From positions 62,001 through 126,000 of the IMG/VR virus record IMGVR_UViG_3300009093_000034: 64,000 nucleotides of DNA; one strand, given 5' to 3'. A model generated the notes under the pieces. It worked only from the letters and a program-made list of their open reading frames with translations. It was not told where the DNA came from and ran no database searches. The translations under genes and the position numbers were made by a program. Below are positions 27,383-55,761 of the stretch, one piece after another; position 1 is the first letter of the stretch; every line of letters begins with the position of its first letter.

Positions 27383-27456
27383 AGCAAAGTAGTGTAACGG
27401 TTTCGCACGACCAGTGTCTACTGGTTAGTTCTAGGATCATCCCCTAGACTTTGCTA
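27383..27456 (+). tRNA. degenerate tRNA-like element (Asp-like GTC in a 6-nt loop, non-canonical T loop)
   Basis: Acceptor AGCAAAG/CTTTGCT, D arm TAGTGTAACGG..GCAC, stem ACCAG/CTGGT, T stem CTAGG/CCTAG. Confidence 0.5.
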
Positions 27457-30603: not shown

Positions 30604-30841
30604 TATTTTCCTTCTTTATCAAAAGTAATATATAGACTAATGTGCAAATTTACTCACCAATGCAAATAAGAAAAAGTTAATATGGATTCCTAGATTGTTC
30701 ATTTTGAACAGTGTGTAAAATGAGCAGCATATATAAGAATCTAACATAATAAGAATCTTAGTACTTAGGGTCAAACCCGGATCAACAAGAGGTTGATTGG
30801 AGTTCATGAAGTTTTTACTGGACCATGTTATACTTGTTTGT

Positions 30842-32485
30842 ATGGCAAAAGAACTCCGATACTCAAACGATTCCAGACAACGCATGTTCAAGGGAGTTGA
30901 CAAGCTTGCAAAAGCTGTCATGACGACTCTTGGCCCAAGAGGACGAACAGTCATCATTCAAAAGACCTTCGGGTCTCCTTTGATCACAAAGGACGGTGTG
31001 ACCGTCGCTAGAGAAATAGAACTTCCAGATCCTTATGAGAACCTAGGTGCTCAGTTGATCAAGGAAGCTGCGATCAGAACTAATGATCTCGCAGGAGACG
31101 GTACCACAACGGCAACAACGTTGGCCTACTCCTTGATCAATCAAGGTCTTAAGAAGATCTCCGAGGGTTTTGACCCGATTGAGATCAAGAAAGGAATGGA
31201 AGAAGCTACTCTTAGAGCTCAGAAACACCTTCAGTCTTTTAAGATGGATGTTCAGGATACCAAAGACATCAGGCATGTTGCAACCATCTCAGCCAACAAC
31301 GATGCAGAACTTGGTGGCCTTCTGGCTGAAGCCTTTGATCACATTGGAAATGACGGAATTGTGACAGTAGAGGATTCTCCAAATCGACAGACCTTTGTCT
31401 CATATTCCGAAGGACTCGAGTATGATGAAGGATACGCAACTCCGTTCATTATCAACGACCCTAGAGGAATTGTTACTTATCAGAACCCAAGGTTCTTGCT
31501 CATTGATAGTGAGCTGAACAGCTTTCACATCATAGTCAAGATACTCGAGAAGTGGACGAGAGACGGTTGTAAGTATCCTTTCGTCATTGTTGCTACTGGG
31601 TTTTCTAACGAAGTTCTGACGACTATCGGTCAGAATGTTCAAGGTGGAAAAAGACCTATAGCTTGTTTCAAAGCTCCAGGTTTTGGAGAGAAGAAACAGG
31701 TTTACTTGAAGGACTTGGCTGCTGCTTTGGGAGCATCCATCTTTACACAACAAGAGGTTGGTCTTCAACTAGCTCAGTTCCAAGAAGAACACCTTGGAAA
31801 AGCTGGTTCCTTGAAGCTTACCTCAAACAGAACAACCATCGTTGATCCTAAGGGAGACGGAGAGGCATTTGAAAAACATGTTCAAGAACTTAGAGAGATG
31901 GAAGCAGAGTCTACTTCAGGCTTTGAAAAAGAACTTCTCCAAGAGCGACTCGCTAAACTCGCTGGTGGAGTTGCTGTGGTTCACGTTGGTGCTTCAACCG
32001 AAGTTGAACTCAAGGAAAAGAAACACAGGGTTGAAGACGCTCTGAATGCAACTAGAGCTGCTCTAGAAGAAGGTATTGTCATCGGTGGAGGAAACACACT
32101 CCTTAGAGTGGCAAAGCTTCTTTCTCAAAACATCAAGAACCTTGGATCACCAGGTTTTATGGCTGGTTACAACGCAGTGGTAAGAGGTCTTAGAGAACCA
32201 TTCTATCAGATCGCTTATAACGCTGGAAAGTCTCTAGAAGATATCGTCGAAGCCGTTCCAATCATTACCAAGACTGGAAGCACCAACATGGGTTGGAACG
32301 CTTTGACTGATACCTTTGGAGACCTATATGAAGAGGGAGTTATCGACCCCATCAAGGTCACTCGATATGCCTTAGAACACGCAGCTTCTGTTGCTGCTAT
32401 CTTCATGGTGGTTGAGTGTGCTATCATCGATCAAGGAAACATCCGTGTCGTACCTAATGGCTCGGAGTTAATGGGAGAATTCTAA
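30842..32485 (+). CDS. groEL: chaperonin GroEL (phage-encoded)
   Basis: MAKELRY...TLGPRGR...TKDGVTVAREI...AGDGTTTAT...ERLAKLAGGVAV...GGG; start set at MAKE. Confidence 0.97.
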   Translation: MAKELRYSNDSRQRMFKGVDKLAKAVMTTLGPRGRTVIIQKTFGSPLITKDGVTVAREIELPDPYENLGAQLIKEAAIRTNDLAGDGTTTATTLAYSLINQGLKKISEGFDPIEIKKGMEEATLRAQKHLQSFKMDVQDTKDIRHVATISANNDAELGGLLAEAFDHIGNDGIVTVEDSPNRQTFVSYSEGLEYDEGYATPFIINDPRGIVTYQNPRFLLIDSELNSFHIIVKILEKWTRDGCKYPFVIVATGFSNEVLTTIGQNVQGGKRPIACFKAPGFGEKKQVYLKDLAAALGASIFTQQEVGLQLAQFQEEHLGKAGSLKLTSNRTTIVDPKGDGEAFEKHVQELREMEAESTSGFEKELLQERLAKLAGGVAVVHVGASTEVELKEKKHRVEDALNATRAALEEGIVIGGGNTLLRVAKLLSQNIKNLGSPGFMAGYNAVVRGLREPFYQIAYNAGKSLEDIVEAVPIITKTGSTNMGWNALTDTFGDLYEEGVIDPIKVTRYALEHAASVAAIFMVVECAIIDQGNIRVVPNGSELMGEF

Positions 32486-33463: not shown

Positions 33464-33937
33464 ATGAAGAAGAGTAAAGAGAACTACCTAATCGTTGGTG
33501 GTAAAGAACTTAGTGCAGGTGTCGTTCTAACAGATGGCTCCTACATTTTAGGTTGTCTTCCCTTTGGTAGATCCTCTGGACCTAGACAATATGATCTTCC
33601 AAAAGGTCACGTTGAGGTTGGAGAGAAACCTAAAGAAGCTGCCATTCGAGAGATGGCAGAAGAAACTGGAATTCATCAACAAGAAGATTGGTTGATCGAT
33701 GTAGGTCAAATGGCTTACACTCCAAAGAAGAACCTTCATCTCTTCTTAAGTCTTCCAGATGCTCTTCCAGCCACAAAAGATCTTCGATGTAGTACCTACT
33801 TTGAGATTGGAGAAAAGGGAAAACAAGTACCTGAGATCATCGGATACAAGTGGATTCCGACTAATGAGCTTCATTGGTTCTTCCCAAGACTCGAACCTCT
33901 AGTTGCAACTGCTCTTAGAAAACTAGAGAATTTGTAA
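33464..33937 (+). CDS. NUDIX hydrolase
   Basis: Nudix box PKGHVEVGEKPKEAAIREMAEETG. Confidence 0.92.
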   Translation: MKKSKENYLIVGGKELSAGVVLTDGSYILGCLPFGRSSGPRQYDLPKGHVEVGEKPKEAAIREMAEETGIHQQEDWLIDVGQMAYTPKKNLHLFLSLPDALPATKDLRCSTYFEIGEKGKQVPEIIGYKWIPTNELHWFFPRLEPLVATALRKLENL

Positions 33938-33959: not shown

Positions 33960-34637
33960 ATGTCCCAAGATAACATTCTCTCTCAAGATGAGATTGATGA
34001 ACTTCTAACAGCCATATCTGTTGGAGGTTATGAAGATCAGGATTCTACAGAGCCTCCTTTTAGAGACATGTATGGTGATAAACATAAGAGGATCAAGATC
34101 TATGACTTCAAGAGACCTGACGTTCTAACTAAGGAACAAATCAGGATCCTAAGTAAGATCCATGAGCAAGCTTCAAGAGAGCTTCAGAAAACTCTTGCCC
34201 AGAGTTTTGATACTGAGGTCTTTAGGATCGCAGTAGCATCAGTAGACCAACTTCAGTACGAAGAATACACTAGAAGTATTAACAACCCGTCCCTAAACTA
34301 TTTCTTTGACGTCAATGATCTTGTTACCAATGTATCGTTGGAACTAGATCTCAAGTTCATCACAAAGTTCATAGTTAGAAGTATGGATGGCATAGCCAAA
34401 GATAAGTTCATTGACTACAATGAACATCACATCATTCGTGATGATGAATACGCTGAGTTTATTAAAGACAGAGACGTTGTATTAAAAGTTGTGAACCAAA
34501 TTTGGGAAACTCTTGATGTCCATTGGAACACATCTCTAGGAAGATCTAGAGATGATCAAGATCCTTCTTCTAACAAAGTCCAAATCGATGCAAACCCTCA
34601 GTTTCTTACTAACCTCTCTCTCCTGAAGAGATGTTAG
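33960..34637 (+). CDS. fliM: FliM-like protein, N-terminal and middle domains (frameshifted at a CT tract)
   Basis: ILSQDEIDELLTAIS (CheY-P binding), IKIYDFKRPD..TKEQIR, VASVDQLQYEEYTRSI, IDANPQF. Confidence 0.88.
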   Translation: MSQDNILSQDEIDELLTAISVGGYEDQDSTEPPFRDMYGDKHKRIKIYDFKRPDVLTKEQIRILSKIHEQASRELQKTLAQSFDTEVFRIAVASVDQLQYEEYTRSINNPSLNYFFDVNDLVTNVSLELDLKFITKFIVRSMDGIAKDKFIDYNEHHIIRDDEYAEFIKDRDVVLKVVNQIWETLDVHWNTSLGRSRDDQDPSSNKVQIDANPQFLTNLSLLKRC

Positions 34638-35098
34638 TTCTAATTACCTATGAGATCTCTATCAAAGATAGACAAGATCTTGATCAGGAACCAGACGAGT
34701 TCATGATGTGCATAGCTTATCCAAGAACCATGTTTACCAAAGAGGTACTGGAGTTACTCCAACCTGATTGGATGAATCAACGATTAGGATTAAATAACAA
34801 AAAACCTAAGAAGGTACAAAAAATGTCACTTAGCGAAGACGCTACAAAGAACTTCAAGCTTATTCAAGGAACAGAGCTTCCTATTGAGGTCCGTCTGGGA
34901 AAGACCAGTAAACCTCTTCAAGATGTCCTGAAGATTGGTGAAGGAACTATTCTGTCACTTGACAAGCTTGCGGGAGAAGCTGTTGATGTTTTTGTCAACG
35001 GAGTTCTCTTTGCAAAAGGCGAAGTGGTTGTTATCGACGAGAACTTTGGTGTTCGAGTAACCGAGGTTCTTGGAGACCAAGATGGAACGTCTGAATAA
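34631..35098 (+). CDS. fliN: end of the FliM middle domain plus FliN/FliY-type SpoA domain
   Basis: EEMLVLITYE...MMCIAYP then IEVRLGKT...GEGTILSLDKLAGEAVDVFVNGVLFAKGEVVVIDENFGVRVTE. Confidence 0.9.
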   Translation: MLVLITYEISIKDRQDLDQEPDEFMMCIAYPRTMFTKEVLELLQPDWMNQRLGLNNKKPKKVQKMSLSEDATKNFKLIQGTELPIEVRLGKTSKPLQDVLKIGEGTILSLDKLAGEAVDVFVNGVLFAKGEVVVIDENFGVRVTEVLGDQDGTSE

Positions 35099-39276: not shown

Positions 39277-40428
39277 TTACTTTTCTTCGTATTTCCATCC
39301 ACGTTCTTGAAGAATATTAACGACAAAACAACTTGGCCCACATGCCTTATGGATCACTTGTTTCTGAGTAAAAGATCTAACAATTTCTTTCTTGTTGGTA
39401 AAGATCGACTCTAAGGAATCTTTTGTTAGATCTCCTAAGTACTCCCTATTTTCACAACAAATGAACGACCAAATGTTTCCTTCTTGAGAGTACTCGAAGT
39501 AGATGTTCTGCAAGAAAGGACAATTATATCTATCGAAACTGAGAACCCAAGATCTTTTAGCATCATTCGATAAGATCGAGATGGTGTTTAAGATCTCTTT
39601 GGTTTGTTCTTTTTCCATCTTGATCAAACCAACAATAGCGGAGATATCAGAGAACGGAACCTTGATCTTTCTATCTTTGTGGGTAGAAACAAGAGCGTTG
39701 ACGTCTTCTTTGATTGCTTGGATCAACAATTCATCTTGTGGATGTTTGGAAAAAACCTCTTCATCACTATAGTCCGGATTGGTGTCGTTCTTATTAAAGA
39801 TGACTGTTAACCTAGACTTTTCTTCATCAGAGAACTCTTCTTCAACAAAATCAAGGATCTTGATGACATAGTGCTCTAAGATGGTCTTTGGACTCATAAC
39901 AAATGAAACAGTTGTAGATAGTTGAGCCTTTAAAAGCTCATGAACAGTGTTGACTGCAGCTTTCCATGCGTTAGGAACTCTCATTCTGGTCATGTGAGTC
40001 TCAGCGTTGTAGCCGTTTAGAGAGACTTGAATGCCTGTTCCTCTACTCGAGATCTTTAGGAAATCTATCCAAGACTTTGTCAGTCTGATACCATTGGTGA
40101 TCAATGAGTAAGAAATATTTGGAGCTTGTTCATACCAAGACTTGAAGATCTCAAGGTTGTGAGGGTTCATTGTGACCTCGCCGCCTTTGATGTTGACGTG
40201 AAAAGTTCCACCAAAGGCTATAGCAGCACCGACGACAGTTTTGGTTAGGATGTCCAAAACCTCTTTGTCCTTAGAGATCTCCATTCCTCTGTTTCCTTTA
40301 TAATTTCTTAAGGACGGAGGAAGATAACAAAACTCACAACTTGCATTGCAGTGGAGGTTATCCAAGCTGACTTGCATAGTTGTGGTTCTATGGTGTTTGA
40401 AGAAGTCGATGTAATAGTCTAAGTCCAT
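39277..40428 (-). CDS. radical SAM protein with SPASM/twitch-like C-terminus
   Basis: CNASCEFC (CxxxCxxC), GGEVT, ITNG, VSLNG; Cys cluster near the C-terminus. Confidence 0.9.
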   Translation of the reverse strand: MDLDYYIDFFKHHRTTTMQVSLDNLHCNASCEFCYLPPSLRNYKGNRGMEISKDKEVLDILTKTVVGAAIAFGGTFHVNIKGGEVTMNPHNLEIFKSWYEQAPNISYSLITNGIRLTKSWIDFLKISSRGTGIQVSLNGYNAETHMTRMRVPNAWKAAVNTVHELLKAQLSTTVSFVMSPKTILEHYVIKILDFVEEEFSDEEKSRLTVIFNKNDTNPDYSDEEVFSKHPQDELLIQAIKEDVNALVSTHKDRKIKVPFSDISAIVGLIKMEKEQTKEILNTISILSNDAKRSWVLSFDRYNCPFLQNIYFEYSQEGNIWSFICCENREYLGDLTKDSLESIFTNKKEIVRSFTQKQVIHKACGPSCFVVNILQERGWKYEEK

Positions 40429-46096: not shown

Positions 46097-46169
46097 GCTG
46101 ACATAGCTCCAATGGTAGAGCACAACCATGGTAAGGTTGTTGTTCCCGGTTCGAGTCCGGGTGTCAGCT
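46097..46169 (+). tRNA. tRNA-Thr(GGT)
   Basis: Full cloverleaf; CAACC-ATGGTAA-GGTTG; TTCGAGT T loop. Confidence 0.9.
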
Positions 46170-46170
46170 C

Positions 46171-46563
46171 TTGAAAAAGAGAAATGGTACTTGCATCCAA
46201 TGTGGAGAACCACTACATGCAGGTGATAAATACTGTAGTAGTACTTGTCAAAATCGATTCCAAACTAAAACTTTGATTTTGAATTGGTTAAACTACGGTT
46301 TACCTAAGAAATATGCCAGTCCCCGTAGAGGACTGGCTTTACCTACCTATGTTTCTTCTTATATTAAAGAACAACAACACGATTGTTGTTCTCTCTGTAA
46401 TAGAGAAGCAATTTGGGAAAATAAACCACTCAATATGGTTTTAGACCATATTGACGGAGATGCATCAAATAATCTAAGATCTAATCTTAGATTAATTTGT
46501 CCAAACTGTAACTCTCAAACTTCTACTTTTTCAGGTAGAAATAGAGGAAACGGTAAAAGATAA
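46171..46563 (+). mobile_element. free-standing HNH endonuclease between tRNA genes
   Basis: LDHIDGDASNNLRSNLRLICPNCNSQT; locally AT-richer; wedged between tRNA-Thr and tRNA-Ala. Confidence 0.8.
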
Positions 46564-46636
46564 GGGGCCTTAGTGACATCGGTAGCACACCTCTATGGCA
46601 TGGAGGAAGGGCGGGTTCGACTCTCCGCAGGTTCCA
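46564..46636 (+). tRNA. tRNA-Ala(GGC)
   Basis: GGGGCCT acceptor; CCTCT-ATGGCAT-GGAGG. Confidence 0.8.
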
Positions 46637-46652
46637 GTGTTTAAGTTTTATT

Positions 46653-46724
46653 GGGCCGTTCGTTCAACGGATAGGACAGGATACTTCTAATATTCTAATG
46701 TGGGTTCGATTCCTGCACGGCTCG
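46653..46724 (+). tRNA. tRNA-Arg(TCT)
   Basis: GGATA-CTTCTAA-TATTC; TTCGATT. Confidence 0.85.
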
Positions 46725-46738
46725 TAGAAGGTATAAAA

Positions 46739-47194
46739 ATGATCAAGAATGTGGCCATGATCTTCATGGCAGCTGTTTTGTTCTCTTGTACTCCAGAGGT
46801 AAAAGTTGAGGTCGTTCCTAGTCCTCAGCCTACTCTGACTCAGGCAGAAGTGACTGCTGAACCTCAGCATCTTCATGTTGATCTTCTCGGTGTTCACACT
46901 GTGAAGCCCAAGGATACTCTTTGGGGTATCAGTGGACTTTGGTACAACGACTACGTTTTGTGGCCGGCTATCTACCAAATCAACAAGGGTCAGATCAAAG
47001 ATCCGGACCTGATCTACACTGGTCAGAAGTTCGATATTCCTAAGCTTTCTGGTACCGATCTTTCTACTTTGTCCGATGGTGATAAGTCCCTTCTTTCTGA
47101 AGGTTACTTGGAAGCCTATCGTGTCTACAAAGACAAGGGTCGTGCCGACGCTGAAGACTATCACAAGTCTGGTGAAGACTTGATCAACAAGTAA
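46739..47194 (+). CDS. LysM-domain lipoprotein
   Basis: Lipobox VLFSC; HTVKPKDTLWGIS...WPAIYQINKGQIKDPDLIYTGQKFDIP. Confidence 0.88.
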   Translation: MIKNVAMIFMAAVLFSCTPEVKVEVVPSPQPTLTQAEVTAEPQHLHVDLLGVHTVKPKDTLWGISGLWYNDYVLWPAIYQINKGQIKDPDLIYTGQKFDIPKLSGTDLSTLSDGDKSLLSEGYLEAYRVYKDKGRADAEDYHKSGEDLINK

Positions 47195-47573
47195 TCAAGT
47201 CTAAGGAAAGGAAAATGACCTTTGCTGTTGGAGCAATTTGTTTAGGGATCGGTTTGATCCTTGGAGTAGCTTTGAGAAAAAGTCCTAAGAAGGATTACGA
47301 AGCTGTTCCAGAACCAGGTTCAGAATGGCTGTAATTCCTGATGATGCTTTCGTCTCATGGATGGATAAGGAAGGAGTTTGGTACTGTACCACCAAGGATT
47401 CACATCTGGTAGGTTCAGGACCTAGCATGCTTCATGCTAGACTTTCTTACTTAGAACTTTTGAAAAACGAGAATAGTTAAGTCGAGGCGGCTGCCCTAAA
47501 GTCGGAGAAATAACGCGTGTCCAGTTCGAAGCGCTCCGCACCTTACACTGGAGAGGGTAACTATTCTTTATAC

Positions 47574-47656
47574 GCACTTGTGGCGGAACGGTATACGCGC
47601 TAGTTTGAGGTACTAGTGGGCGCAAGCTCGTGAGGGTTCAAATCCCTCCAAGTGCA
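47574..47656 (+). tRNA. tRNA-Leu(GAG), canonical type II
   Basis: CTAGT-TTGAGGT-ACTAG; variable arm GGGC-GCAA-GCTC. Confidence 0.92.
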
Positions 47657-47668
47657 TAAGGTAAGAAA

Positions 47669-48779
47669 ATGAAACACTTGTTTTGTAAGATCTTTCACAA
47701 GCCTACGTTTGTGAAACAGTGGGAGAGCGAAGGTAAAAAGCATTTAGATGCTTGGCCTTATAATCCTCTTGTTCTTCATCCAGATCTGAGTTACAACTTC
47801 CTTCATTTCATGTGTCCAAAGTGCAAGGAAGAATGGGACGAGTTCAAAGGCGATCCTTTCCCAAGGGTTCTTCGTCCGAGATATTATAGAAAAAGTGAGA
47901 CCGACACTACAGATACAATCTGGAGTTAAGTCTAAAACATGGTGGAGTTGCCAGAGAGGTTATTGGCCCTGACTGTGAATCAGGTGGTCGCGGGTTCGAG
48001 TCCCGTACTTCACCCTTTCTTAGGAGCATCAAATGCTGGTTAATCCGTTGATCTCTGTTCCGTGCAAACATTGCCAACAGACTACTACGATCAACGTCAA
48101 GTCTATCTCAAGTCTAAACACAGAGAATGAAAGACTCCAGCGAGAGTTAGATGAAGCCAACAAGAAGATCAAGTTGTTAGAACTTGCTGCTGGTTGGGGA
48201 AAGTCAGACTCAGGTGGCTTTGATGGTATGTTTGGAGATCTCTTCTCTACAAAGAAGAGAAACGAATATTGATGAAAGTAAAACTTCCATCTAGAGGACG
48301 AGGTCTCTTTAGAGAAGAGTACTATTCAATTTGCTCAGCTCACCAAGAGTTCAATCAAGAGTGTTCTACTTGCAAGATTGGTTCTTGGCATAATGTGTGG
48401 TTAGGTGTTGCTAATAGCGTTCTTTTCAAAGTTTGGCCAGCTCTTTGGATCTGGAATGCCAATCGTCCAAAGAACAAAACCAAGTGGCTCAAGTCCATCA
48501 ACGCTAAGAATAATTTCCCAAATCTAAGGTAAGAAAATGAAATTCTCAATTTTGGTCTTGTCATTCTGTCTTCTAACTGGTTGTAGCGCTGCTTACAATG
48601 GCGGAATGAACAACAGCTATTCTCCTTCCCTGTTTTCAATCCCAGAAGGATTGGAGTACGGAAAAGAAGTGGGAAAGAACTGGTTCGAAGGAACCTACAA
48701 AGGTGACAAGGTTTTGATCCATCAGACCGTTTCATACGGTGGATATTGGGAAGTTACCTTTATGTACGTGAAGAAGTAA
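47669..48779 (+). CDS. small hypothetical proteins (47669-47929, 48033-48272, 48269-48532, 48537-48779 lipoprotein)
   Basis: ORF track; the last has lipobox LLTGC. Confidence 0.55.
47941..48015 (+). tRNA. tRNA-His(GTG)
   Basis: CCTGA-CTGTGAA-TCAGG; C73. Confidence 0.88.
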
Positions 48780-48796
48780 GATCGTATATTAGATGA

Positions 48797-49408
48797 ATGC
48801 CTCAATTCACCGACGACCAAACCTTCTTACTGAAAAAGTCCTTTGAAAAGTTCTTGAAGAACTCAACTGGAAAGTTCGTTGTTTTTGACCTTGAGACAAA
48901 CGGTTTTCATGGTTCTAGTGTTCTTTCCATCTCAGCACAAAAGTGCCTCTTTGTAAGAGGAAAGAAAGTCTCTGTTCTTGGGGACTACAATCGTTTCTAC
49001 TTTCCTGTAGAGAAGTTCAATTGGCAGGCCATCAAGATCAACGGTCTTGGAAGAACTGCAGTGACAGCAAAAAGAGGTTCAGCTACTTACGCTCAGAACT
49101 TTATCGACGACATTACTGCCTTCAAACGATGGTGTGAAGGAATCGAACACTTTGTAGGTCACAACATCATCAAGTTCGATTGTGAGTTCTTTCCAAAGGA
49201 CTTCAAGTTCACACACGTGTTTGACACCATGTTAGAAACTGTGGAACTTTGTAAGATATTGAGAGATGACGGTAAGAACAAGTTCCCTAAGTTGAGGGAA
49301 GCCGCAGAGTTCTTTGAGATTGATATTTCTGAGGGAATTCTTCACACGTCTAGTTTTGACGTAGATGTGACCACTCAACTGTTTGAGAAATTGTACTCAC
49401 TAACTTAA
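48797..49408 (+). CDS. DEDDh 3'-5' exonuclease (DnaQ-like)
   Basis: VVFDLETNG...VGHNIIKFD...DTM...PKLREAAE...HTSSFDV. Confidence 0.9.
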   Translation: MPQFTDDQTFLLKKSFEKFLKNSTGKFVVFDLETNGFHGSSVLSISAQKCLFVRGKKVSVLGDYNRFYFPVEKFNWQAIKINGLGRTAVTAKRGSATYAQNFIDDITAFKRWCEGIEHFVGHNIIKFDCEFFPKDFKFTHVFDTMLETVELCKILRDDGKNKFPKLREAAEFFEIDISEGILHTSSFDVDVTTQLFEKLYSLT

Positions 49409-49581
49409 GGAGTGATCGTGACTGCAAGTATCATTTTCTTGTGTATCTTTTTTGCAGTAGCCGTTTTTTGGCTTGGTTACACTGTTGGTTGGTCGTCTAA
49501 CGATAACTCATTCAACAAACAAATGCGTCGACGAAGACAAATTGATATCCAGAACACCATTGAGAGTTTTGGAAGAACTAC

Positions 49582-49662
49582 GCGGAAGTGACCTCAGAGC
49601 GAATGGCACAGCTCGGAGTCTTAAACACTTTGGTTTTGGGGGTTCGAGTCCCCTCTTCCGTA
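49582..49662 (+). tRNA. atypical tRNA-Leu(TAA) with extra helix and no variable arm
   Basis: Acceptor GCGGAAG/CTTCCGT+A; D loop GAATGGCACA; loop CTTAAAC. Confidence 0.8.
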
Positions 49663-49817
49663 GAAAGGTAGAGTCAAACCTTGAGGGTTAAATTCTTCAA
49701 AATGACGAAGGTTGATTTCAGCAACCACCTAATGCACAGGTCTTGGGATAAACGTGGCGCGACGATTATACCTGGGAACAGGGTAGCCCCGATGAAAAGG
49801 GACTGAATGTGCTACAT

Positions 49818-49889
49818 GCTTCCATCGACTAGCGGCTAGGTCGACTCCCTCTCAAGGAGTAAACGCGGGTTCGATTCCCGCTGGAAGTA
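49818..49889 (+). tRNA. tRNA-Glu(CTC)
   Basis: ACTCC-CTCTCAA-GGAGT. Confidence 0.9.
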
Positions 49890-49894
49890 TACAC

Positions 49895-49967
49895 GCTCTA
49901 GTCGTCTACTGGATAGGATGCCTGACTTTCAATCAGGAAGACGTGGGTTCGAATCCCACCTAGAGTA
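49895..49967 (+). tRNA. tRNA-Glu(TTC)
   Basis: CCTGA-CTTTCAA-TCAGG. Confidence 0.9.
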
Positions 49968-49973
49968 TACATA

Positions 49974-50060
49974 GGCTCGGTGGCAGAATAGTTATGCAGC
50001 GGTCTGCAAAACCGTATAGGTTTGAAAGAACCTAAGTGGGTGCAAGTCCCATCTGGGCCT
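49974..50060 (+). tRNA. tRNA-Cys(GCA) with a long variable arm
   Basis: GCGGT-CTGCAAA-ACCGT; extra hairpin TAGGTT-TGAAAG-AACCTA; U73. Confidence 0.8.
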
Positions 50061-50371
50061 CTAGGTTTGATAGAAGGGAAGCATAAGACTTCTGTATTGA
50101 GAACCTTACAAAGGAGAGTGGTGCGTATACGCGTATCGCTAATATCGTAGAGAAGGAAGTCCAATGTTTTGGTCAGCCTTCGACCTACATCACGGTCTTT
50201 GTAGATGAGAATGGTCAAGAGATTGAGCATATTGAGTCTAGAGAGATTGAAGAGTTTGAATACCGTCTTGAGGAGCAACTTTTGCTTCTTAGGATCACCC
50301 AGGAAGAACGCGAACGCCAGTTGATAAAGACTGAAGCGTTCTTCAAGGACCTTCAACAGGTCGGGTAATAG

Positions 50372-50445
50372 GCTGATGTGCATCGACTAGTAAAGTGGCC
50401 GCTCTCATAAGGCGGATTATGTGGGAGCGTTACCCACCATCAGCA
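50372..50445 (+). tRNA. tRNA-Met/Ile2(CAT), variant T loop
   Basis: GCTGATG/CATCAGC; CCGCT-CTCATAA-GGCGG; T loop AGCGTTA. Confidence 0.75.
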
Positions 50446-50534
50446 TCCCTAAAGAAAAGTCAACTGTCCCTGGCCGCGAGTTGTCGTGAGACTTCCGCAT
50501 GCCCACCATAGTTGACTTTTCTTTTTAGAAAGGA

Positions 50535-50849
50535 ATGAAAATGAAGAAATTTCTTTTGGCTGCTCTTGTAGCCATGCTTTTGTTCTCTTGTACGGGAGAG
50601 TTCAAAGAAACTGACATTGCCCCACAGTGGGCTCACAGTTCATCAACGAACTATGTTTTTACTGAACTTACCAACTACGATCGTTACAACTTTCGTGTGT
50701 ACAATTGGGTCTTGACTCCTATGAATGGTAAGGTCAAGCAGGATGCTGTTCTCTATCTTGAGAAACTTTATCCTGGAGACTCTGTTTACAACGAGAGTGA
50801 TTCTTTGATCGTGATCTCTGAAATGAAACCTATTCCGATAACCAAGTAA
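50535..50849 (+). CDS. lipoprotein
   Basis: MKKFLLAALVAMLLFSC lipobox. Confidence 0.7.
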   Translation: MKMKKFLLAALVAMLLFSCTGEFKETDIAPQWAHSSSTNYVFTELTNYDRYNFRVYNWVLTPMNGKVKQDAVLYLEKLYPGDSVYNESDSLIVISEMKPIPITK

Positions 50850-51141
50850 AAGAAACGTGTGAAAAGACTTATGGCGTCGGGAGATACACCACAACCTATG
50901 ACTACTGGAAGCGTGACCTAGAGCACGTAGCCGCCCCAAAAGAATAAAGGCAGTATCTGTCAACTACAGAGGCGGACTCAGAAGGTAGCAATGGAACTTC
51001 TAAACGACAGGTAAGATGGATAAAGGCCCTGTTTTGGAAGACAGACGGAATAATTGGCCGTCAACTTCGGTGAAAGAGATCCAGGTAAATAACCGAGGAA
51101 AAGAAGTGTGAAAAAGTTCCCCACATGTTTATATTTGAATC

Positions 51142-51441
51142 ATGAGTAAGTACTTAGTTCTTAAGGAACAACTAGAAACTATTGGGACAGGTGAGATGAC
51201 CTGTTTTGGAAATTCTATGACCCCAATTTTATCTAGTGGTTCCAGATTACTCTTTCAAAAATGTGATGACTACGAAGTTGGAGACATCGTCTTTTGTAAG
51301 ATCAAAGGACGATTCATAGATGCTCACTTGGTCACTAAGAAAGACAAAGGTTCTAAGAGATGGATGATCTCTAACAATCATGGCCATGAAAATGGTTGGA
51401 CTCATACGATCTATGGTAAGGTCGTGAAGGTGCTTAGTTAA
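51142..51441 (+). CDS. S24/S26 peptidase-like protein
   Basis: GNSMTPIL...EVGDIVFCK...AHLV. Confidence 0.7.
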   Translation: MSKYLVLKEQLETIGTGEMTCFGNSMTPILSSGSRLLFQKCDDYEVGDIVFCKIKGRFIDAHLVTKKDKGSKRWMISNNHGHENGWTHTIYGKVVKVLS

Positions 51442-51442
51442 A

Positions 51443-51981
51443 ATGGTTACTGTCTACATGTCCAAAGAAGACGAACAAATTCTAAAAGATCTCAATGAAA
51501 ACGTTGATCTAGCTACACAGGTTAGAGAAGATTTCTTAGACAAGATGCTTTTGAAGTACTCAAAGTTCAAAGACAGAGATAGGATGTATTTTGAAAATGG
51601 ACGAGTTGAAAAGTTTGAGTCTGTTCGTAGAAATAAAGATAATCCCAGGCATCTTGAACTCACATACTACTACATGAGGACAGGAAACCACGATTATCCT
51701 CTTGGTGAGGAACCAATCAAAGATCAACTCTACACCAAACAAGAACTGATTGAGAGATTGACATCCCATCTAGAGTCTCTTAAGCGATGACTCTATCTTG
51801 GCATCTTACTGATGAACAGGTTCAAAAACTAGTGGAATGGAAGAAAACTCTTTCTCCAGAACCGAGGACTGCTATAGGTGGAGCTTTTACCTATAGTTTC
51901 ACTGATACGTCTATCGGAACCGTGATCAAGGTTAAGTACTGGGATGGTCAAGAGATTGATCTCACAGACTATGATTTTTAG
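51443..51981 (+). CDS. two hypothetical proteins (51443-51790, 51787-51981)
   Basis: Coupled ORFs. Confidence 0.55.
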
Positions 51982-51996
51982 TTACTAATTTTATAC

Positions 51997-52072
51997 GCGT
52001 CGGAAACGGAGCTGGTGGCAGCCGCGCGAGCTTATATCTCGCTGTAGGAGAGTTCGATTCTCTCACGACGTA
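51997..52072 (+). tRNA. tRNA-Ile(TAT)
   Basis: GCGAG-CTTATAT-CTCGC; TTCGATT. Confidence 0.78.
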
Positions 52073-52193
52073 GAAAACAAGAAGGCCTTCACGGCGGACC
52101 AGGTCGCTCCTGGTTTGGTTTATGATCTTCGTCAGTACTGAAACGACACCGGAAAAGCTGACGAAATCTTTCTTGTGATTTTACTAACTCTCT

Positions 52194-52826
52194 ATGACAA
52201 GAGACAACGCTCGACACATGGTTTTGTCCATAGCAAATAGTATGGGGATAAAGCTCTCTTCTGAAGAGGAAGAGAAGCACATCAATGATGTCATAAAGAG
52301 CACAGATGAGTGGTTAGAGAATAATGGTCCAGATCTTCCAGAAGAGGAGATCTCAGACGAAGATGCTTTTCCCATCACTGATGTTTCTAGCGATGAGAGA
52401 AAGGTCTTGAACAGCTATAGAAACTATGGTTATGAGACTATCAATAAGTTCTTGAGGTTCGGAAACTCTGAGTCTTTGTCTCAACACAAAGACATGATTG
52501 AGTTTCGAATAGCTACGATCGATGACGTCATAGAAAGGAATCATTCCTTATCTGACGGAGTGGTCTATAGAATTGTTGAAGATGAAGGTTTTCTAAAAAG
52601 TTCGTTCACTGAACCAGCTTTTTTATCAACTTCATTTGATCACAGTTATATTGATTCACAGACGGAGAACTATGAGAACCCAGAGATTCTGGTGATTCAT
52701 GTTCCAAAAGGAACTCCGTACGCAAGAGTGGCAGAACATGCCATGGATGATTTTGAAGGTGAGGTTCTTCTTCCAAGAGGAGGAACCTTGACAAAGCAAG
52801 GAGATCATTGGAACTTTTCTTGCTAA
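52194..52826 (+). CDS. ADP-ribosyltransferase (Alt/VIP2-like, R-S-E clade)
   Basis: YRNYGYETINKFLR...VVYR...FLSTS...EGEVLLPRG. Confidence 0.9.
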   Translation: MTRDNARHMVLSIANSMGIKLSSEEEEKHINDVIKSTDEWLENNGPDLPEEEISDEDAFPITDVSSDERKVLNSYRNYGYETINKFLRFGNSESLSQHKDMIEFRIATIDDVIERNHSLSDGVVYRIVEDEGFLKSSFTEPAFLSTSFDHSYIDSQTENYENPEILVIHVPKGTPYARVAEHAMDDFEGEVLLPRGGTLTKQGDHWNFSC

Positions 52827-52869
52827 AAAGTTTTCAAAAGGATAAGATCGTGAGATATTATTCTTTACA

Positions 52870-53066
52870 AGGGCTTGTACAGTTTCGACGGCTGTTGTAA
52901 TAAGGTTCAACGAAATGCCCATGCACCCGAACGAACCTGTTCCCTTTAAACAAGGGACGTATAGCAAGCCGGACCCGATGTCAAAGTCGGCAGGTCCATT
53001 GGGATAAGGGTTCCCCGCATGACCGTACCGGGGAGTAAGAGCAAAGGTCATAAATCATGACACCCT
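52870..53066 (+). ncRNA. tmRNA-like structured RNA with no recognisable tmRNA 3' end
   Basis: Begins GGGCTTGTACAGTTTCGACGG just after a TGAGATATT promoter; hairpins and two possible pseudoknots. Confidence 0.4.
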
Positions 53067-53080
53067 GTATCTTTTATTCT

Positions 53081-53152
<72 letters not shown>

Positions 53153-53171
53153 TCTCTTTTATACTCTCACT

Positions 53172-53248
53172 ACCGAGTGAGCTCAGCTGGTTGCTGAGAC
53201 CCGTCTGATAAGCGGTTACAGGACGTGTTCGATTCACTCCACTCGGAT
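53172..53248 (+). tRNA. tRNA-Ile(GAT)
   Basis: CCCGT-CTGATAA-GCGGT; imperfect T stem. Confidence 0.65.
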
Positions 53249-53276
53249 AACTCGCGTTGGTGCTATGACTTACTTC

Positions 53277-53352
53277 GGAAAATTCGCCTAGCTGGTCAAG
53301 GCAAAATCATTTGAGATTTCTATCGCTGGTTCAACTCCAGCATTTTTCACCA
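53277..53352 (+). tRNA. degenerate tRNA-Gln-like (TTG in a 6-nt loop), encoded CCA
   Basis: GGAAAAT/ATTTTTC-A-CCA; AAATC-ATTTGA-GATTT. Confidence 0.55.
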
Positions 53353-53483
53353 CAAAACAGTTGTGGCAGAAGTTACCGAGTTACTTTGAATCAAACCAAC
53401 CAGTTCCCACGGTTAAGTAGTTGATTCCTGGAAACTTTTGAAAAAAAGTTTTCAAAAACCAAAAGCTTTGAGATATTAAATAA

Positions 53484-54050
53484 GCAAACTGACGCTGAGT
53501 CAGTTCTAAAGTTTAACTTAGTTGAGAGCAAAAACTAAGATGCGTGCTTAAAACCTTCTCCACGAAAGTGGATCCCCCCGGAAGCAGAGGCTGTTGTAGG
53601 TAACCTGAAGGCCTCCTCGATGCATCGCTCTCCCTGGAAGATCTTACGACGATCGTTGATCCTAGTAAGTTATTCTAGAACCAAGTTCGTTGAACTTGGG
53701 AGCCGGACAAGTTGGATAAGTAAACACCTAATGGTGACGCGAATCTGACTTCAGTGCACACTGAAAACCCTCCTTTGGAACCGAAACGTTCTGAAGATTC
53801 ACCCCAGGTGAGGCTGTTGTGGGTATCCTGAAGGCCTCCATCGTGCACGGTATGTCTTGGCCGCTTTTGGCGGCGCCTGAGACCTTTTAGACAGGACTCG
53901 GGGAGGTGAAAACCTGGCAGTTTATGTGAGTTCGCTATTTGCGTTGGCGCGCACCGGGAACAACCCTCGCCAAAGGGGATCTGAGTAGGAATCCAGTTAG
54001 GATCGAAAGGATAAACGTGGCTGCTTTCTCATTCCAACTCTTTGAGTTGG
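53484..54050 (+). ncRNA. candidate large ornate ncRNA (~570 nt)
   Basis: ORF-free, GC-elevated, own promoter, many hairpins, duplicated 30-nt module. Confidence 0.65.
53587..53839 (+). repeat. direct repeat GAGGCTGTTGT(A/G)GGTA(A/T)CCTGAAGGCCTCC at 53587-53616 and 53810-53839
   Basis: 28 of 30 positions identical by eye. Confidence 0.9.
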
Positions 54051-54052
54051 GG

Positions 54053-54147
54053 AACCATCTAGTGTAACGGTGGCACACCGCCTGACGATAGGTCGTAGAG
54101 ACTGACAATAAGGGGGCAGATTGAGGTTCAACTCCTCTCGATGGAAT
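54053..54147 (+). tRNA. tRNA-like element with an expanded anticodon arm
   Basis: D arm TAGTGTAACGGTGGCAC, T loop TTCAACT, CCATC/GATGG acceptor; ~20 extra nt in the anticodon region. Confidence 0.45.
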
Positions 54148-54242
54148 CAGTAGATTTTTGAGAATCAAGATCTTGCGGGGTTAAGAGGATCAACGAACTG
54201 ACGTATCATGAAATCTAGCCGCAAACGGAAAGTAGAGATGCG

Positions 54243-54315
54243 GTTCCCATCGTCTAGTCGGATAGGACACCGGCCGTGCAGGCCGGAAACACGGGTTCGA
54301 GCCCCGTTGGGGATA
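54243..54315 (+). tRNA. tRNA with Glu/Asp-like body and a TGC-centred loop (identity uncertain)
   Basis: CGTCTAGTCGGATAGGAC D arm; CCGGC-CGTGCAG-GCCGG; U3-G70. Confidence 0.6.
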
Positions 54316-54341
54316 ACGTACTAACTAAAAGTACAACACAT

Positions 54342-54411
54342 TGCGAGTTGGTGTAATAGCAGCATCAAAGTCTCATAAGCTTTAGGTCCCGTGCAATTCG
54401 GTGGCTCGCGT
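54342..54411 (+). tRNA. tRNA(CAT), variant T arm
   Basis: AAAGT-CTCATAA-GCTTT; GCGAGT/GCTCGC. Confidence 0.6.
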
Positions 54412-54574
54412 CTAACCCACAGCGGTGGAATGTCTTACTTCGGTCTAGAAAAAACAGACAGTCCGATTATTCTTGGGTTTATTTTCATATCAGGCGTGCT
54501 TCACAACGTCTCAGAAGTCTATCGTAGTGGTAGAAAGAGTGATCGGAATTGTCGTGACCGTCCTATCGACCTAC

Positions 54575-54646
54575 GGGCTGATCGTATAACGGTTATTACA
54601 GTAGCTTTGCAAGCTTCGAATCAGGGTTCGATTCCCTGTTGGTCCA
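54575..54646 (+). tRNA. tRNA-Ala(TGC)
   Basis: G3-U70, A73; loop TTTGCAA. Confidence 0.85.
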
Positions 54647-54701
54647 GTGAAGATGTATAGAAACAGATTGGTAAGAATCCGTTCTCCATTCTGATAAAAA
54701 C

Positions 54702-54776
54702 GGGTCATTAGCTCAGTCCAGTAGAGCAACTCACTTGCAATGAGAAGGTCATCGGAGCGAAGCCGATATGTATCCA
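54702..54776 (+). tRNA. tRNA-Ala(TGC), variant T loop
   Basis: CTCA-CTTGCAA-TGAG; T loop AGCGAAG. Confidence 0.7.
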
Positions 54777-54884
54777 ACAAACAAAAGAGGAAGAGTGATG
54801 AAACAGAAACTATTCCTCGGCAATCTCTAATAGCCATCCAGCTAAGAATTGTCCGAGGTTAAACAAGAAAAATTGGATAACCTT

Positions 54885-54956
54885 GGGCTCTTGGCAGATC
54901 GGTATTGCAGCTGACTTTTAATCAGTTATAGGTGGGTTCGACTCCTACAGGGCTTA
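54885..54956 (+). tRNA. tRNA-Lys(TTT)
   Basis: GCTGA-CTTTTAA-TCAGT. Confidence 0.88.
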
Positions 54957-54960
54957 TTTT

Positions 54961-55032
54961 CGGCGGCTAGCTCAATGGTAGAGCAAGAGCCTTTTAATCT
55001 CTAGGTTCAGGGTTCGAGTCCCTGGTCGCTGA
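54961..55032 (+). tRNA. tRNA-Lys(TTT)
   Basis: Canonical D and T arms; loop CTTTTAA. Confidence 0.85.
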
Positions 55033-55036
55033 TAAC

Positions 55037-55109
55037 GGACCCTTAGCTCAATAGGTAGAGCGGCAGACTCTTAATCTGTAGGTCCTCGGTTCGATTCCGA
55101 GAGGGTTCA
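55037..55109 (+). tRNA. tRNA-Lys(CTT)
   Basis: GCAGA-CTCTTAA-TCTGT. Confidence 0.92.
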
Positions 55110-55113
55110 TCAC

Positions 55114-55186
55114 GGGCAGTTGACAGAATGGGATTGTGACTGGCTCTTACCCAGTTTTTGAGGGAGTTCGATCCTCCCACTGCTCA
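55114..55186 (+). tRNA. tRNA-Lys(CTT)
   Basis: ACTGG-CTCTTAC-CCAGT. Confidence 0.82.
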
Positions 55187-55309
55187 CTAATTAGAGGTCC
55201 AGTAAATGGATGTTAGTCGTTAAACTCGATGAAGTTGGTGGTGAAGCCCAACACGGTTTTGACAATACGACTGATGCCTCTTCGGTAACGTACGCATCAG
55301 TTATCATAT

Positions 55310-55382
55310 TCTTTCGTAGCTCAGTCGGTAGAGCGGCGCACTGTTAATGCGATGGTCGGCGGTTCGAGTCCGTCCGAGGGAG
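55310..55382 (+). tRNA. tRNA-Asn(GTT)
   Basis: CGCA-CTGTTAA-TGCG; G73. Confidence 0.9.
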
Positions 55383-55436
55383 TAATTTGTTTCTGTTTGG
55401 TGAATCTTTTGAGATATTTCTATTTCAGAGGTTAAT

Positions 55437-55757: not shown

Positions 55758-55761
55758 ACAT

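What the first reader, a model, noticed from the sequence alone, without database searches (positions are those of the whole stretch)
33960..35098. Phage-encoded flagellar switch chimera: FliM N and middle domains joined to a FliN/FliY SpoA domain
Seen: the protein carries the CheY-P-binding peptide LSQDEIDELL, the spirochaete-style YDFKRPD..TKEQIR and VASVDQL.YEE..RSI FliM segments, and then a FliN/FliY-type C-terminus (LDKLAGEAVDVFVNG...KGEVVVIDENFGVRVTE) rather than the FliM SpoA domain. No other flagellar gene is nearby; neighbours are phage NUDIX and hypotheticals. Established: FliM and FliN form the C-ring and FliM binds CheY-P to switch rotation; SpoA domains are also the core of type III export sorting. 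Inference: the phage may titrate CheY-P or poison or retune the host C-ring, controlling motility or chemotaxis or blocking flagellotropic superinfection.
Basis: partly seen in the sequence, partly recalled or inferred. Interest (0 to 1): 0.88.

Follow-up and report, generated by a model that had tools for sequence, protein, structure and literature searches.

The report
Broken phage FliM–FliN motor-switch gene
A roughly 306-kb phage, probably of spirochaetes, carries a fast-evolving, frameshifted copy of a natural FliM–FliN flagellar switch fusion that has lost its FliG-docking loop. Intact relatives sit in related phages and in Treponema chromosomes, so phages seem to have taken parts of the host flagellar motor switch.

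Summary
The motifs are real and the architecture holds: a FliM CheY-P-binding peptide and FliM middle domain, followed by a FliN-type (not FliM-type) SpoA domain.

- **The window copy is not one gene.** It is two ORFs (33960-34637 and 34631-35098), separated by a frame change in a C/T run at 34613-34623. The same split occurs on four contigs.
- **It is not a unique chimera.** More than 110 protein clusters of natural FliM–FliN fusions exist. Some are in Treponema chromosomes and jumbo phages, next to a FliG paralogue, and keep the GGXG FliG-binding loop. Others are "solo" phage copies like this one. The seven solo copies with known context, including an intact 371-aa orthologue in a syntenic phage contig, lack GGXG and lack a FliG neighbour.
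- **A conserved internal start exists.** An SD-like motif plus ATG lies 9-10 codons before the SpoA domain (window 34823). This suggests an SctQ/Spa33-like second product, a free FliN-like protein that the frameshift does not affect.

Best reading: a phage-borne switch decoy that binds CheY-P and is uncoupled from FliG, broken or split in this genome. Identity is firm. The mechanism is inferred. No paper describing this was found.

The parts
33960..34637 (+). ORF A, 225 aa. FliM N-terminal peptide plus most of the FliM middle domain. It ends 8 codons after the frame change.
   Evidence: Pfam FliM 55.6 bits (residues 48-147). PDB best match is the H. pylori FliM middle domain 4fq0, E 6.5e-11, over residues 39-212. 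38.9% identical to P0002 residues 4-219.
33978..34007 (+). CheY-P-binding peptide LSQDEIDELL (residues 7-16).
   Evidence: Read directly. The same peptide is kept in P0002, P0135, P0182, the L012 protein and canonical spirochaete FliMs.
34383..34394 (+). Position of the canonical FliM GGXG (FliG-binding) loop. Here it reads M-D-G-I, so the motif is lost.
   Evidence: Alignment to H. pylori FliM, family alignment and motif scan.
34613..34623 (+). 11-base C/T run where the reading frame changes. The downstream part is in the -1 (= +2) frame relative to ORF A.
   Evidence: frame 3 to frame 2. The same 225-aa and 155-aa products are recorded on 4 contigs, including a MEGAHIT contig of 305,853 bp that is identical over 6.7 kb.
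34631..35098 (+). ORF B, 155 aa (frame open from 34613). Last strands and helices of the FliM middle domain, a linker, and the FliN-type SpoA domain.
   Evidence: 44.2% identical to P0002 residues 213-357. Its ATG overlaps the ORF A stop.
34808..34825 (+). Candidate internal ribosome-binding site (AAGAAGG, 8-nt spacer) and ATG at 34823. It would give a 91-aa free FliN-like protein (34823-35098).
   Evidence: An SD-like motif plus in-frame ATG lies 9-10 codons before the SpoA domain in 7 of 13 family genes, phage and bacterial. ATGs in that zone carry an SD-like motif in 10 of 26 cases, against 6 of 96 elsewhere (Fisher p 1.3e-4).
34847..35080 (+). FliN-type SpoA domain, with the GEVVVID hydrophobic-patch segment.
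33464..33937 (+). NUDIX hydrolase gene, the conserved upstream neighbour. It marks the syntenic position of the switch gene.
   Evidence: 86% aa identity to the L007 NUDIX gene, which also directly precedes the intact orthologue.

Best explanation
**What it is (shown).** The locus is the "solo" phage form of a natural FliM–FliN fusion gene family that originated in spirochaete switch-complex paralogues.

Intact members such as the syntenic 371-aa orthologue P0002 keep three modules:
- the N-terminal CheY-P-binding peptide;
- a FliM-fold middle domain;
- a C-terminal FliN-type SpoA domain, which replaces the FliM-type one.

They have lost the GGXG loop that canonical FliM uses to hold FliG. They also have no FliG gene beside them.

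**How it probably works (inferred).**
- The protein still captures CheY-P.
- Through its FliN-type SpoA domain it still pairs with host FliN, FliM_C or FliH.
- It cannot pass the signal to FliG.
- It therefore acts as a decoy or dominant-negative subunit. This would uncouple the host's periplasmic flagellar motors from chemotaxis signalling, or disturb C-ring and export function, during infection.
- The gene probably makes two products, as SctQ/Spa33 does: the full-length protein, and a free FliN-like SpoA protein from a conserved internal SD+ATG.

**In this genome.**
- A frame change in a C/T run splits the gene, so ordinary translation cannot make the full-length protein.
- What can still be made is a 225-aa CheY-P-binding fragment lacking the last two core strands of the middle domain.
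- The 91-aa FliN-like product from 34823, and possibly the 155-aa ORF B, can also still be made.
- So the copy is either newly disabled or tolerated as a split.
For: **Architecture**
-.

**Intact orthologue in a collinear phage contig**
-.
- Its AlphaFold model (pLDDT 69.6; middle-domain core 85-94) matches Salmonella FliM in C-ring cryo-EM structures. It matches FliM middle-domain crystals with TM 0.76-0.82 normalised to the target.

**Phage setting**
-.

**GGXG loss**
- GGXG is absent in the window copy, P0002, P0135, P0182, P0132 and the L012 protein, and in P0151 and P0360.
- It is present in canonical FliMs and in the fusions that have a FliG neighbour.

**FliG neighbour**
- None of 7 GG-less loci has one: window, L007, L008, L012, L026, L027, L028.
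- 5 of 6 GGXG-keeping loci have one directly upstream: L005, L016, L020, L022, L024. In L021 a FliG_C-domain protein lies about 9 kb upstream.
- Fisher p 0.005. The loci are not phylogenetically independent.

**Selection signs**
- The CheY peptide and the SpoA domain (64-65% identical to P0002's, 55-57% between P0002's and T. maritima FliN) stay conserved. The rest diverges fast: end branch 1.5 against a median of 0.19, and 39% identity where neighbouring genes reach 57-86%.

**Internal start**
-.
- Precedent: Spa33/SctQ behaves as a FliM–FliN fusion plus free FliN. A Salmonella FliM–FliN fusion mutant needs free FliN (PMC4832279).

**Frameshift is real**
-.
Against: - No experiment and no multimer model supports binding to CheY-P, FliN, FliH or FliG.
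- The host is not identified. Spirochaetota is inferred only from the nearest FliM relatives (33-37% identity) and from Treponema-named family members.
- The window copy is broken, so in this phage the function may be gone.
- The very long branch and the lost GGXG loop could reflect decay rather than specialisation.
- The bacterial FliG + fusion modules lie outside flagellar operons. The whole paralogue family may therefore have a non-motor role.
- The internal SD+ATG could be a relic of the former fliN start.
- The second large assembly may come from the same reads.
Confidence: 0.5

Rival explanations
1. Plain pseudogene. In this phage lineage the switch gene is dead and decaying. None of its fragments does anything.
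For: - The frame change is present on all 4 contigs that carry the gene.
- ORF A lacks the last two core strands of the middle domain (P0002 model strands 218-240).
- The window has the longest branch class in the FliM-domain tree.
- GGXG is lost.
Against: - There is only one lesion. Both frames are otherwise open over 225 and 161 codons.
- The CheY peptide is a perfect match.
- The SpoA domain scores 110.6 bits against the FliN/Y model.
- The internal SD+ATG is intact.
- The orthologue is intact.
Confidence: 0.28
2. Non-flagellar scaffold. The fusion family, with or without its FliG paralogue, builds a separate C-ring-like or SctQ-like platform. The phage would use it for its own purposes, for example polar localisation or an export or assembly platform, rather than to interfere with the motor.
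For: - Bacterial FliG + fusion pairs lie away from flagellar operons. They sit among housekeeping, TPR and AAA genes.
- Jumbo-phage contigs carry their own FliG + fusion pair. One contig has a FliG with an N-terminal membrane helix.
- Unrelated SpoA fusions exist, such as TIR + 2 SpoA.
Against: - The CheY-P-binding peptide is the best-conserved short segment outside the SpoA domain. It is even duplicated in P0182 and in the L005 protein, which points to chemotaxis signalling.
- The solo phage forms lack FliG and the FliG-binding loop, so they cannot build a FliG-based ring on their own.
Confidence: 0.12
3. Regulated recoding or phase variation. The C/T run allows ribosomal or polymerase slippage, or on/off switching by repeat-length change, so some full-length protein is made.
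For: - The frame change lies exactly in a dinucleotide-type run.
- It is the only lesion.
- It is reproducible across contigs.
Against: - There is no canonical slippery heptamer.
- The downstream RNA folds no better than shuffled sequence (z -1.18).
- All other family members seen are in one frame.
- The run is short.
Confidence: 0.07
4. Artefact. Host DNA was mis-assembled into a phage contig, or the frameshift is a sequencing or assembly error.
For: The two INPHARED "phage" records with FliM hits look like bacterial DNA rather than phage. MaAM05 carries murJ, fabI, pomA, fliM and fliY, and a published comment questions that genome (PMC13623518). MT835480 is an unverified, unannotated record.
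Against: - The gene has the same neighbours in a related, diverged phage contig.
- GC content is the same as the surroundings.
- Sequence is identical in an independently built MEGAHIT contig that starts at a different point of the genome.
- The split products occur on 4 contigs.
Confidence: 0.03

Closest known systems
FliM, flagellar motor switch protein (TIGR01397 / PF02154), especially Spirochaetota FliM
   Same: - N-terminal CheY-P-binding peptide.
- The IYDFKRPD and VASVDQL.YEE blocks.
- A CheC-like middle-domain fold, seen in the orthologue model.
- The nearest cellular relatives are spirochaete FliMs.
   Different: - No GGXG loop.
- The second half of the middle domain is highly diverged.
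- The FliM-type SpoA is replaced by a FliN-type SpoA.
- Scores lie far below the equivalog cut-off (79 and 31 bits against 219.6).
- It is encoded by a phage, away from any flagellar operon.
- It is split by a frame change here.
FliN (TIGR02480) and the C-terminal domain of FliY
   Same: - The SpoA domain passes the FliN domain cut-off.
- It is about 55% identical to T. maritima FliN.
- The GEVVVID patch is kept.
   Different: - It is fused behind a FliM-like body.
- There is no CheC-type phosphatase motif, so it is not FliY.
SctQ / Spa33 / YscQ of injectisomes, and the Salmonella FliM–FliN fusion mutant (PMC4832279)
   Same: - One gene combines a FliM-like body with a FliN-like SpoA.
- It has a candidate internal start that would give a free SpoA protein.
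   Different: - It is not an SctQ by sequence (TIGR02551 42.6 bits against 100.8).
- The solo phage form has one SpoA domain, not two.
- Internal initiation has not been shown.
Uncharacterised FliG-paralogue + FliM–FliN fusion modules of Treponema chromosomes and jumbo phages (for example P0314, P0298, P0318, L005)
   Same: Same fusion family: FliM body + FliN-type SpoA, the same CheY peptide, and the same internal SD+ATG.
   Different: - Those keep GGXG.
- They often keep a degenerate FliM_C before the FliN SpoA.
- They have a FliG gene directly upstream.
- The window form has none of these.

Membership tests
FliM (TIGR01397 / PF02154) | N-terminal CheY-P-binding peptide (LSQxEIDxLL) | tested here: met
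   LSQDEIDELL at ORF A residues 7-16. Binding itself was not tested.
FliM (TIGR01397 / PF02154) | CheC-like middle domain | tested here: met
   - Pfam FliM 55.6 bits, above the 27-bit cut-off, but only model positions 1-99 of 192.
- The PDB FliM middle-domain alignment spans residues 39-212.
- The orthologue model has TM 0.76-0.82 (normalised to the target) to FliM middle domains.
- In the window the domain is cut before its last two strands.
FliM (TIGR01397 / PF02154) | GGXG loop that contacts the FliG middle domain | tested here: not met
   No GG.G in ORF A; the aligned position reads MDGI.
FliM (TIGR01397 / PF02154) | FliM-type C-terminal SpoA domain | tested here: not met
   - FliM_C HMM 13.5 bits against FliN/Y HMM 110.6 bits.
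- FliM_C forms a separate clade with 100/100 support, and the window's domain lies on the other side.
FliM (TIGR01397 / PF02154) | Whole-protein score above the equivalog cut-off (219.6 bits), and one intact ORF | tested here: not met
   79.2 and 31.1 bits for the two pieces. The gene is split by a frame change.
FliN (TIGR02480 / PF01052) | SpoA domain scoring above the FliN domain cut-off | tested here: met
   87.7 bits against 84.05. Best PDB matches are FliN chains.
FliN (TIGR02480 / PF01052) | Small stand-alone protein partnering FliM | tested here: inconclusive
   - It is fused in intact relatives.
- A free 91-aa product from the internal SD+ATG at 34823 is predicted, not shown.
FliY (CheC-type phosphatase + FliN domain) | CheC/FliY active-site motif D/S-x3-E-x2-N-x22-P in the middle domain | tested here: not met
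   - The motif, and even E..N, is absent in both window pieces and in P0002.
- Fold matches to FliM rank above those to FliY and CheC.
SctQ (TIGR02551) | Score above the family cut-off; two tandem SpoA domains; internal translation product | tested here: not met
   - 42.6 bits against 100.8.
- One SpoA domain only.
- The internal start is only predicted.
Bacteriophage genome (jumbo phage) | Virion and replication genes, size, independent replicon | tested here: met
   - Tail-collar protein of 1471 aa, T4-type RNA ligase, PolA and DUF6267.
- 30 tRNA genes.
- IMG/VR contig of 305,833 bp, plus a differently permuted 305,853-bp assembly.
- Capsid and terminase genes were not seen inside this 64-kb window.

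The most novel reading that the evidence does not exclude
Large phages of spirochaetes carry their own flagellar C-ring parts. Some carry FliG + FliM–FliN pairs. Others carry solo FliM–FliN proteins that have shed FliG binding. The phages would use these parts to take over or silence the host's periplasmic flagellar motors and chemotaxis output during infection. Each gene would make two products, like an injectisome SctQ. These would be the first viral flagellar-motor components. They would also be a natural set of dominant-negative switch variants.
Probability: 0.35. Interest if true: 0.85.

Novelty: new variant of a known kind. Interest (0 to 1): 0.68.

Why it matters
- Phages are known to use flagella as receptors, but I found no report of phage-encoded rotor or switch proteins.
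- A virus-borne FliM–FliN that keeps the CheY-P and SpoA modules but drops FliG coupling would be a new way to control host behaviour.
- It offers a natural dissection of which FliM surfaces are needed for which contact.
- It links flagellar C-ring genes to the one-gene, two-product logic of injectisome SctQ.
- The related FliG + fusion modules in Treponema chromosomes are uncharacterised. They may explain extra switch paralogues in spirochaetes.
- It is also a caution for annotation: "FliM" calls in viral bins can be real phage genes (here) or bacterial DNA (MaAM05).

Tried and rejected
1. **Known phage relatives.** Megablast of 14 kb against 50,697 phage records found nothing. The tblastn hits in that set, MaAM05 and MT835480, look like bacterial DNA.
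2. **FliG in the window or its contig.** tblastn and a FliG pattern scan of IMG/VR found none. The scan used only two peptide patterns, so a very diverged FliG elsewhere in the 306 kb could be missed.
3. **FliY or CheC phosphatase reading.** Rejected, because the active-site motif is absent.
4. **Programmed frameshift.** There is no slippery heptamer and no significant downstream structure.
5. **AU tests placing the window's SpoA with FliM_C.** Not rejected (p 0.81 and 0.60), but uninformative. On an unrooted tree the constraint only asks that the window branch sit next to the long FliM_C stem, and the FliN side is poorly resolved with 78 columns. The HMM scores and identities decide the type instead.
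6. **Deep phylogeny of the FliM part.** Unresolved, with long-branch warnings. Direction of transfer and the number of phage acquisitions remain open.
7. **Sample origin.** A search for the JGI sample numbers in papers found nothing. My recollection that several of these numbers are termite-gut samples is unverified.
8. **First alignment scan.** The first alignment-based viral scan failed for lack of conserved stretches and was repeated with fewer sequences.
9. **Joined protein.** I used the two pieces and the intact orthologue instead.
Full report
**1. What is at 33960-35098**

The + strand holds two ORFs, not one: 33960-34637 (225 aa) and 34631-35098 (155 aa). The second frame is open from 34613.

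- **First piece.** Pfam calls it FliM (PF02154, 55.6 bits), but only model positions 1-99 of 192 match. NCBIfam's FliM model TIGR01397 gives 79 bits, far below its 219.6-bit cut-off.
- **Second piece.** Pfam calls it FliMN_C (PF01052, 79.9 bits). NCBIfam's best models are the FliY C-terminus (105 bits) and FliN TIGR02480 (87.7 bits, above its 84.05 cut-off). The FliM model reaches only 31 bits.

The intact relative P0002 aligns to 33975-34634 in frame 3 and to 34616-35074 in frame 2. The frame therefore changes inside the 11-base C/T run at 34613-34623. ORF A ends eight codons later. The first ATG of ORF B overlaps that stop.

Apart from this one lesion both frames are clean. The chance of open frames this long is about 1e-6 and 5e-5 under the window's base composition.

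**2. Is the break real, and is the gene really in a phage?**

- The window is part of IMGVR_UViG_3300009093_000034, 305,833 bp.
- The same 225-aa and 155-aa products are on record for four contigs. One is a MEGAHIT contig of 305,853 bp that starts at a different point of the genome and is identical over the 6.7 kb I could compare. So the break is not a slip of one assembler.
- The ENA assemblies look like re-assemblies of the JGI samples. Independence of the reads is therefore not shown.
- The element looks like a jumbo phage:
  - a 1471-aa tail-collar protein, T4-type RNA ligase, family-A DNA polymerase and DUF6267;
  - a GroEL gene;
  - 30 tRNA genes.
- I did not see capsid or terminase genes inside these 64 kb.
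- GC content around the gene (0.41) matches the rest of the window.
- The contig L007 (GCA_037025285.1, 13.9 kb) is collinear with window 31.8-43.3 kb. It carries, directly after the same NUDIX gene, an intact 371-aa orthologue, P0002.

That rules out a host-DNA chimera.

Neighbouring genes are 57-86% identical in protein between the two contigs. The switch gene is only 39% (front) and 44% (back) identical. It evolves much faster than its surroundings.

**3. Is the C-terminal domain FliN-type? Yes.**

- Against PDB sequences, every hit of piece B is FliN or FliY. The best are T. maritima FliN 1o6a/1yab, E 1e-19.
- I built type-specific HMMs from 34 FliM C-terminal domains and 41 FliN/FliY domains. 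They score the window domain at 13.5 and 110.6 bits respectively.
- In SpoA-domain trees the FliM_C domains form one clade: 99 SH-aLRT with 81 rows, 100/100 with 38 rows. The window domain lies on the FliN/FliY side, next to those of P0002, P0132, P0135 and P0182.
- AU tests did not reject placing the window next to the FliM_C stem. On an unrooted, poorly resolved 78-column tree, that says nothing about domain type.
- Caveat: my FliM_C references are nearly all spirochaete-like. The general NCBIfam models agree, however.

**4. The front part is FliM-like, with one telling loss**

- Piece A aligns to the H. pylori FliM middle domain over residues 39-212.
- The AlphaFold model of the intact orthologue has mean pLDDT 69.6, with the middle-domain core at 85-94.
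  - Its best matches are full-length Salmonella FliM in C-ring cryo-EM structures.
  - It matches FliM middle-domain crystals with TM 0.76-0.82 normalised to the target. These rank ahead of FliY and CheC.
- No CheC/FliY phosphatase motif is present.
- The GGXG loop is gone. Canonical FliM uses this loop to contact the FliG middle domain (established knowledge from FliG–FliM co-crystal work). The window reads M-D-G-I at that place. P0002, P0135, P0182, P0132 and the L012 protein also lack the motif. Canonical spirochaete FliMs have it.
- In the P0002 model the frame change falls just before the β-hairpin at residues 218-240, a high-confidence core element. ORF A therefore lacks the end of the middle domain, and ORF B carries it.

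**5. The family is large and not only viral**

A profile of the intact relatives retrieved 2,361 proteins at E ≤ 1e-10. The best 120 listed are almost all 310-490 aa with a FliM domain plus a terminal FliN-type SpoA. Named members come from Treponema sp. R8-4-B8 and a Treponema MAG.

Gene contexts fall into two groups.

- **GGXG-keeping fusions**
  - They often retain a degenerate FliM_C before the FliN SpoA.
  - A FliG paralogue lies directly upstream.
  - Chromosomal examples: L020 sits among AspRS, glutamine synthetase and an ammonium transporter. L024 sits among acc/fab genes.
  - Jumbo-phage-like examples: L005/L014 (329 kb, flanked by GIY-YIG homing endonucleases), L016, and L022 (328 kb, ORFans and HNH).
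  - L021 has only a FliG_C-domain protein about 9 kb upstream.
  - L006 has separate fliM, fliN and a fliG with an N-terminal membrane helix.
- **GG-less, single-SpoA "solo" fusions**
  - They have no FliG in the flanks and lie among small phage-like ORFans.
  - Examples: window, L007, L008, L012, L026, L027, L028.

Counting loci, 0 of 7 solo fusions against 5 of 6 GGXG-keeping fusions have an adjacent FliG (Fisher p 0.005). The loci are not independent.

The fusion is therefore not this phage's invention. What the solo phage forms add is loss of FliG coupling.

The FliM-domain tree joins the window to P0002 (support 92) on very long branches (1.5 against a median of 0.19). Deeper nodes are unresolved.

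The 80 best genome matches to P0002 are nearly all Spirochaetota at 33-37% identity. This supports a spirochaete source and probably a spirochaete host. It does not prove either.

**6. A second product?**

In 7 of 13 family genes for which I hold DNA, an in-frame ATG lies 9-10 codons before the SpoA domain, with an SD-like motif 5-12 nt upstream. The genes are the window, L007, L005, L016, L020, L022 and L024, so both phage and chromosomal copies.

- Across the 13 genes, ATGs in the 3-50 codons before the SpoA domain carry an SD-like motif in 10 of 26 cases. Other internal ATGs do so in 6 of 96 cases (p 1.3e-4).
- In the window, 7.8% of internal ATGs and 49% of gene starts have such a motif.
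- In the window the site is AAGAAGG (34808-34814), an 8-nt spacer and ATG 34823. It would give a 91-aa FliN-like protein.

This mirrors injectisome SctQ. [quoted passage not shown] A Salmonella FliM–FliN fusion mutant needs free FliN (PMC4832279).

The alternative is that the site is a relic of the old fliN start. Its retention at the same position in genes that are only about 40% identical argues for use, but this remains inference. If the site is used, the frameshift does not touch this product.

**7. How it most likely works**

*Shown:* the modules, the loss of GGXG, the absence of FliG neighbours, the phage setting, the break, and the conservation pattern.

*Inferred:*
- The intact solo protein binds CheY-P through its N-terminal peptide.
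- It docks through its FliN-type SpoA domain to host FliN, FliM_C or FliH.
- It cannot engage FliG.
- It therefore soaks up the chemotaxis signal or sits in the C-ring as a dead subunit.
- Two family members (P0182 and the L005 protein) carry two tandem CheY-type peptides, which fits a sink.
- In this genome only fragments can be made, so the function is reduced, changed or lost.

I give 0.5 to the whole statement: about 0.9 for identity and the break, and about 0.4 for the decoy mechanism.

Rivals:
- plain pseudogene, 0.28;
- non-flagellar scaffold, 0.12;
- recoding or phase variation at the run, 0.07 (no stimulatory structure, z -1.18);
- artefact, 0.03.

**8. Comparison with known systems, and novelty**

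- It works like a FliM/FliN switch unit, and by gene logic like SctQ.
- It is not a FliM by membership. The GGXG loop, the FliM-type SpoA, the equivalog score and an intact ORF all fail.
- Its SpoA domain is a FliN domain by the curated cut-off.
- It is neither FliY nor SctQ.
- Eight literature searches, seven of them on these topics, found no description of phage-encoded FliM, FliN or FliG, or of natural FliM–FliN fusions. The only FliM hits in curated phage records look like bacterial DNA.

I rate it a new variant of a known kind, with interest 0.68. The family-level finding would surprise specialists and is testable. The copy in this window is broken, and no function has been shown.

Noticed in passing
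window 46097-59076 (also 27383-27456): Thirty tRNA genes are predicted, 29 of them in a 13-kb stretch with many duplicates (Lys x5, Pro x3, Ala x3). Two tRNA-like genes have an odd two-base anticodon call.
   Followed up: no
window 30797-32485: A full-length GroEL-type chaperonin (Cpn60_TCP1) is encoded by the phage, just upstream of the small-gene block that holds the switch gene. It is also present in the related contig L007.
   Followed up: partly
L020 8983-11272; L024 8963-11242; L021 10001-11278: Treponema-type chromosomes carry FliG-paralogue + FliM–FliN fusion pairs outside flagellar operons. They lie next to housekeeping, TPR and AAA genes. Treponema sp. R8-4-B8 has two such fusions. 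Their role is unknown.
   Followed up: partly
L006 6342-7556; L016 7300-8004; L022 8451-10004: The phage-borne FliG genes vary. One has an N-terminal transmembrane helix. One is cut down to 234 aa without the N-terminal domain. One is 517 aa with two FliG_N hits.
   Followed up: no
P0125 (405 aa): A protein with an N-terminal TIR domain followed by two FliN-type SpoA domains. This is an unusual pairing that might be a defence or signalling protein.
   Followed up: no
P0182 residues 32-41 and 70-79; L005 protein residues 6-15 and 39-48: Two family members carry two tandem CheY-P-binding-like peptides at the N-terminus.
   Followed up: partly
L001 (MW495066.1, 'Microcystis phage MaAM05'): This deposited phage genome has murJ, acyl-CoA dehydrogenase, pomA, ompA, fliM, a FliY-like gene, fabI and engB in a row, so it looks like bacterial DNA. 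A published comment says the same (PMC13623518).
   Followed up: yes
window 39277-40428 versus L007 8142-10448: The related contig has two tandem radical-SAM genes where the window has one.
   Followed up: no
window 8293-12711 (- strand): A 1471-aa protein with a phage tail-collar domain heads a block of large minus-strand ORFs (2137-12711) with almost no family matches. This is probably the tail-fibre or baseplate module.
   Followed up: no
L027 7594-8577: A GGDEF (diguanylate cyclase) gene lies 5.5 kb from the solo FliM–FliN gene on a phage-like contig. It is a second possible handle on host motility.
   Followed up: no
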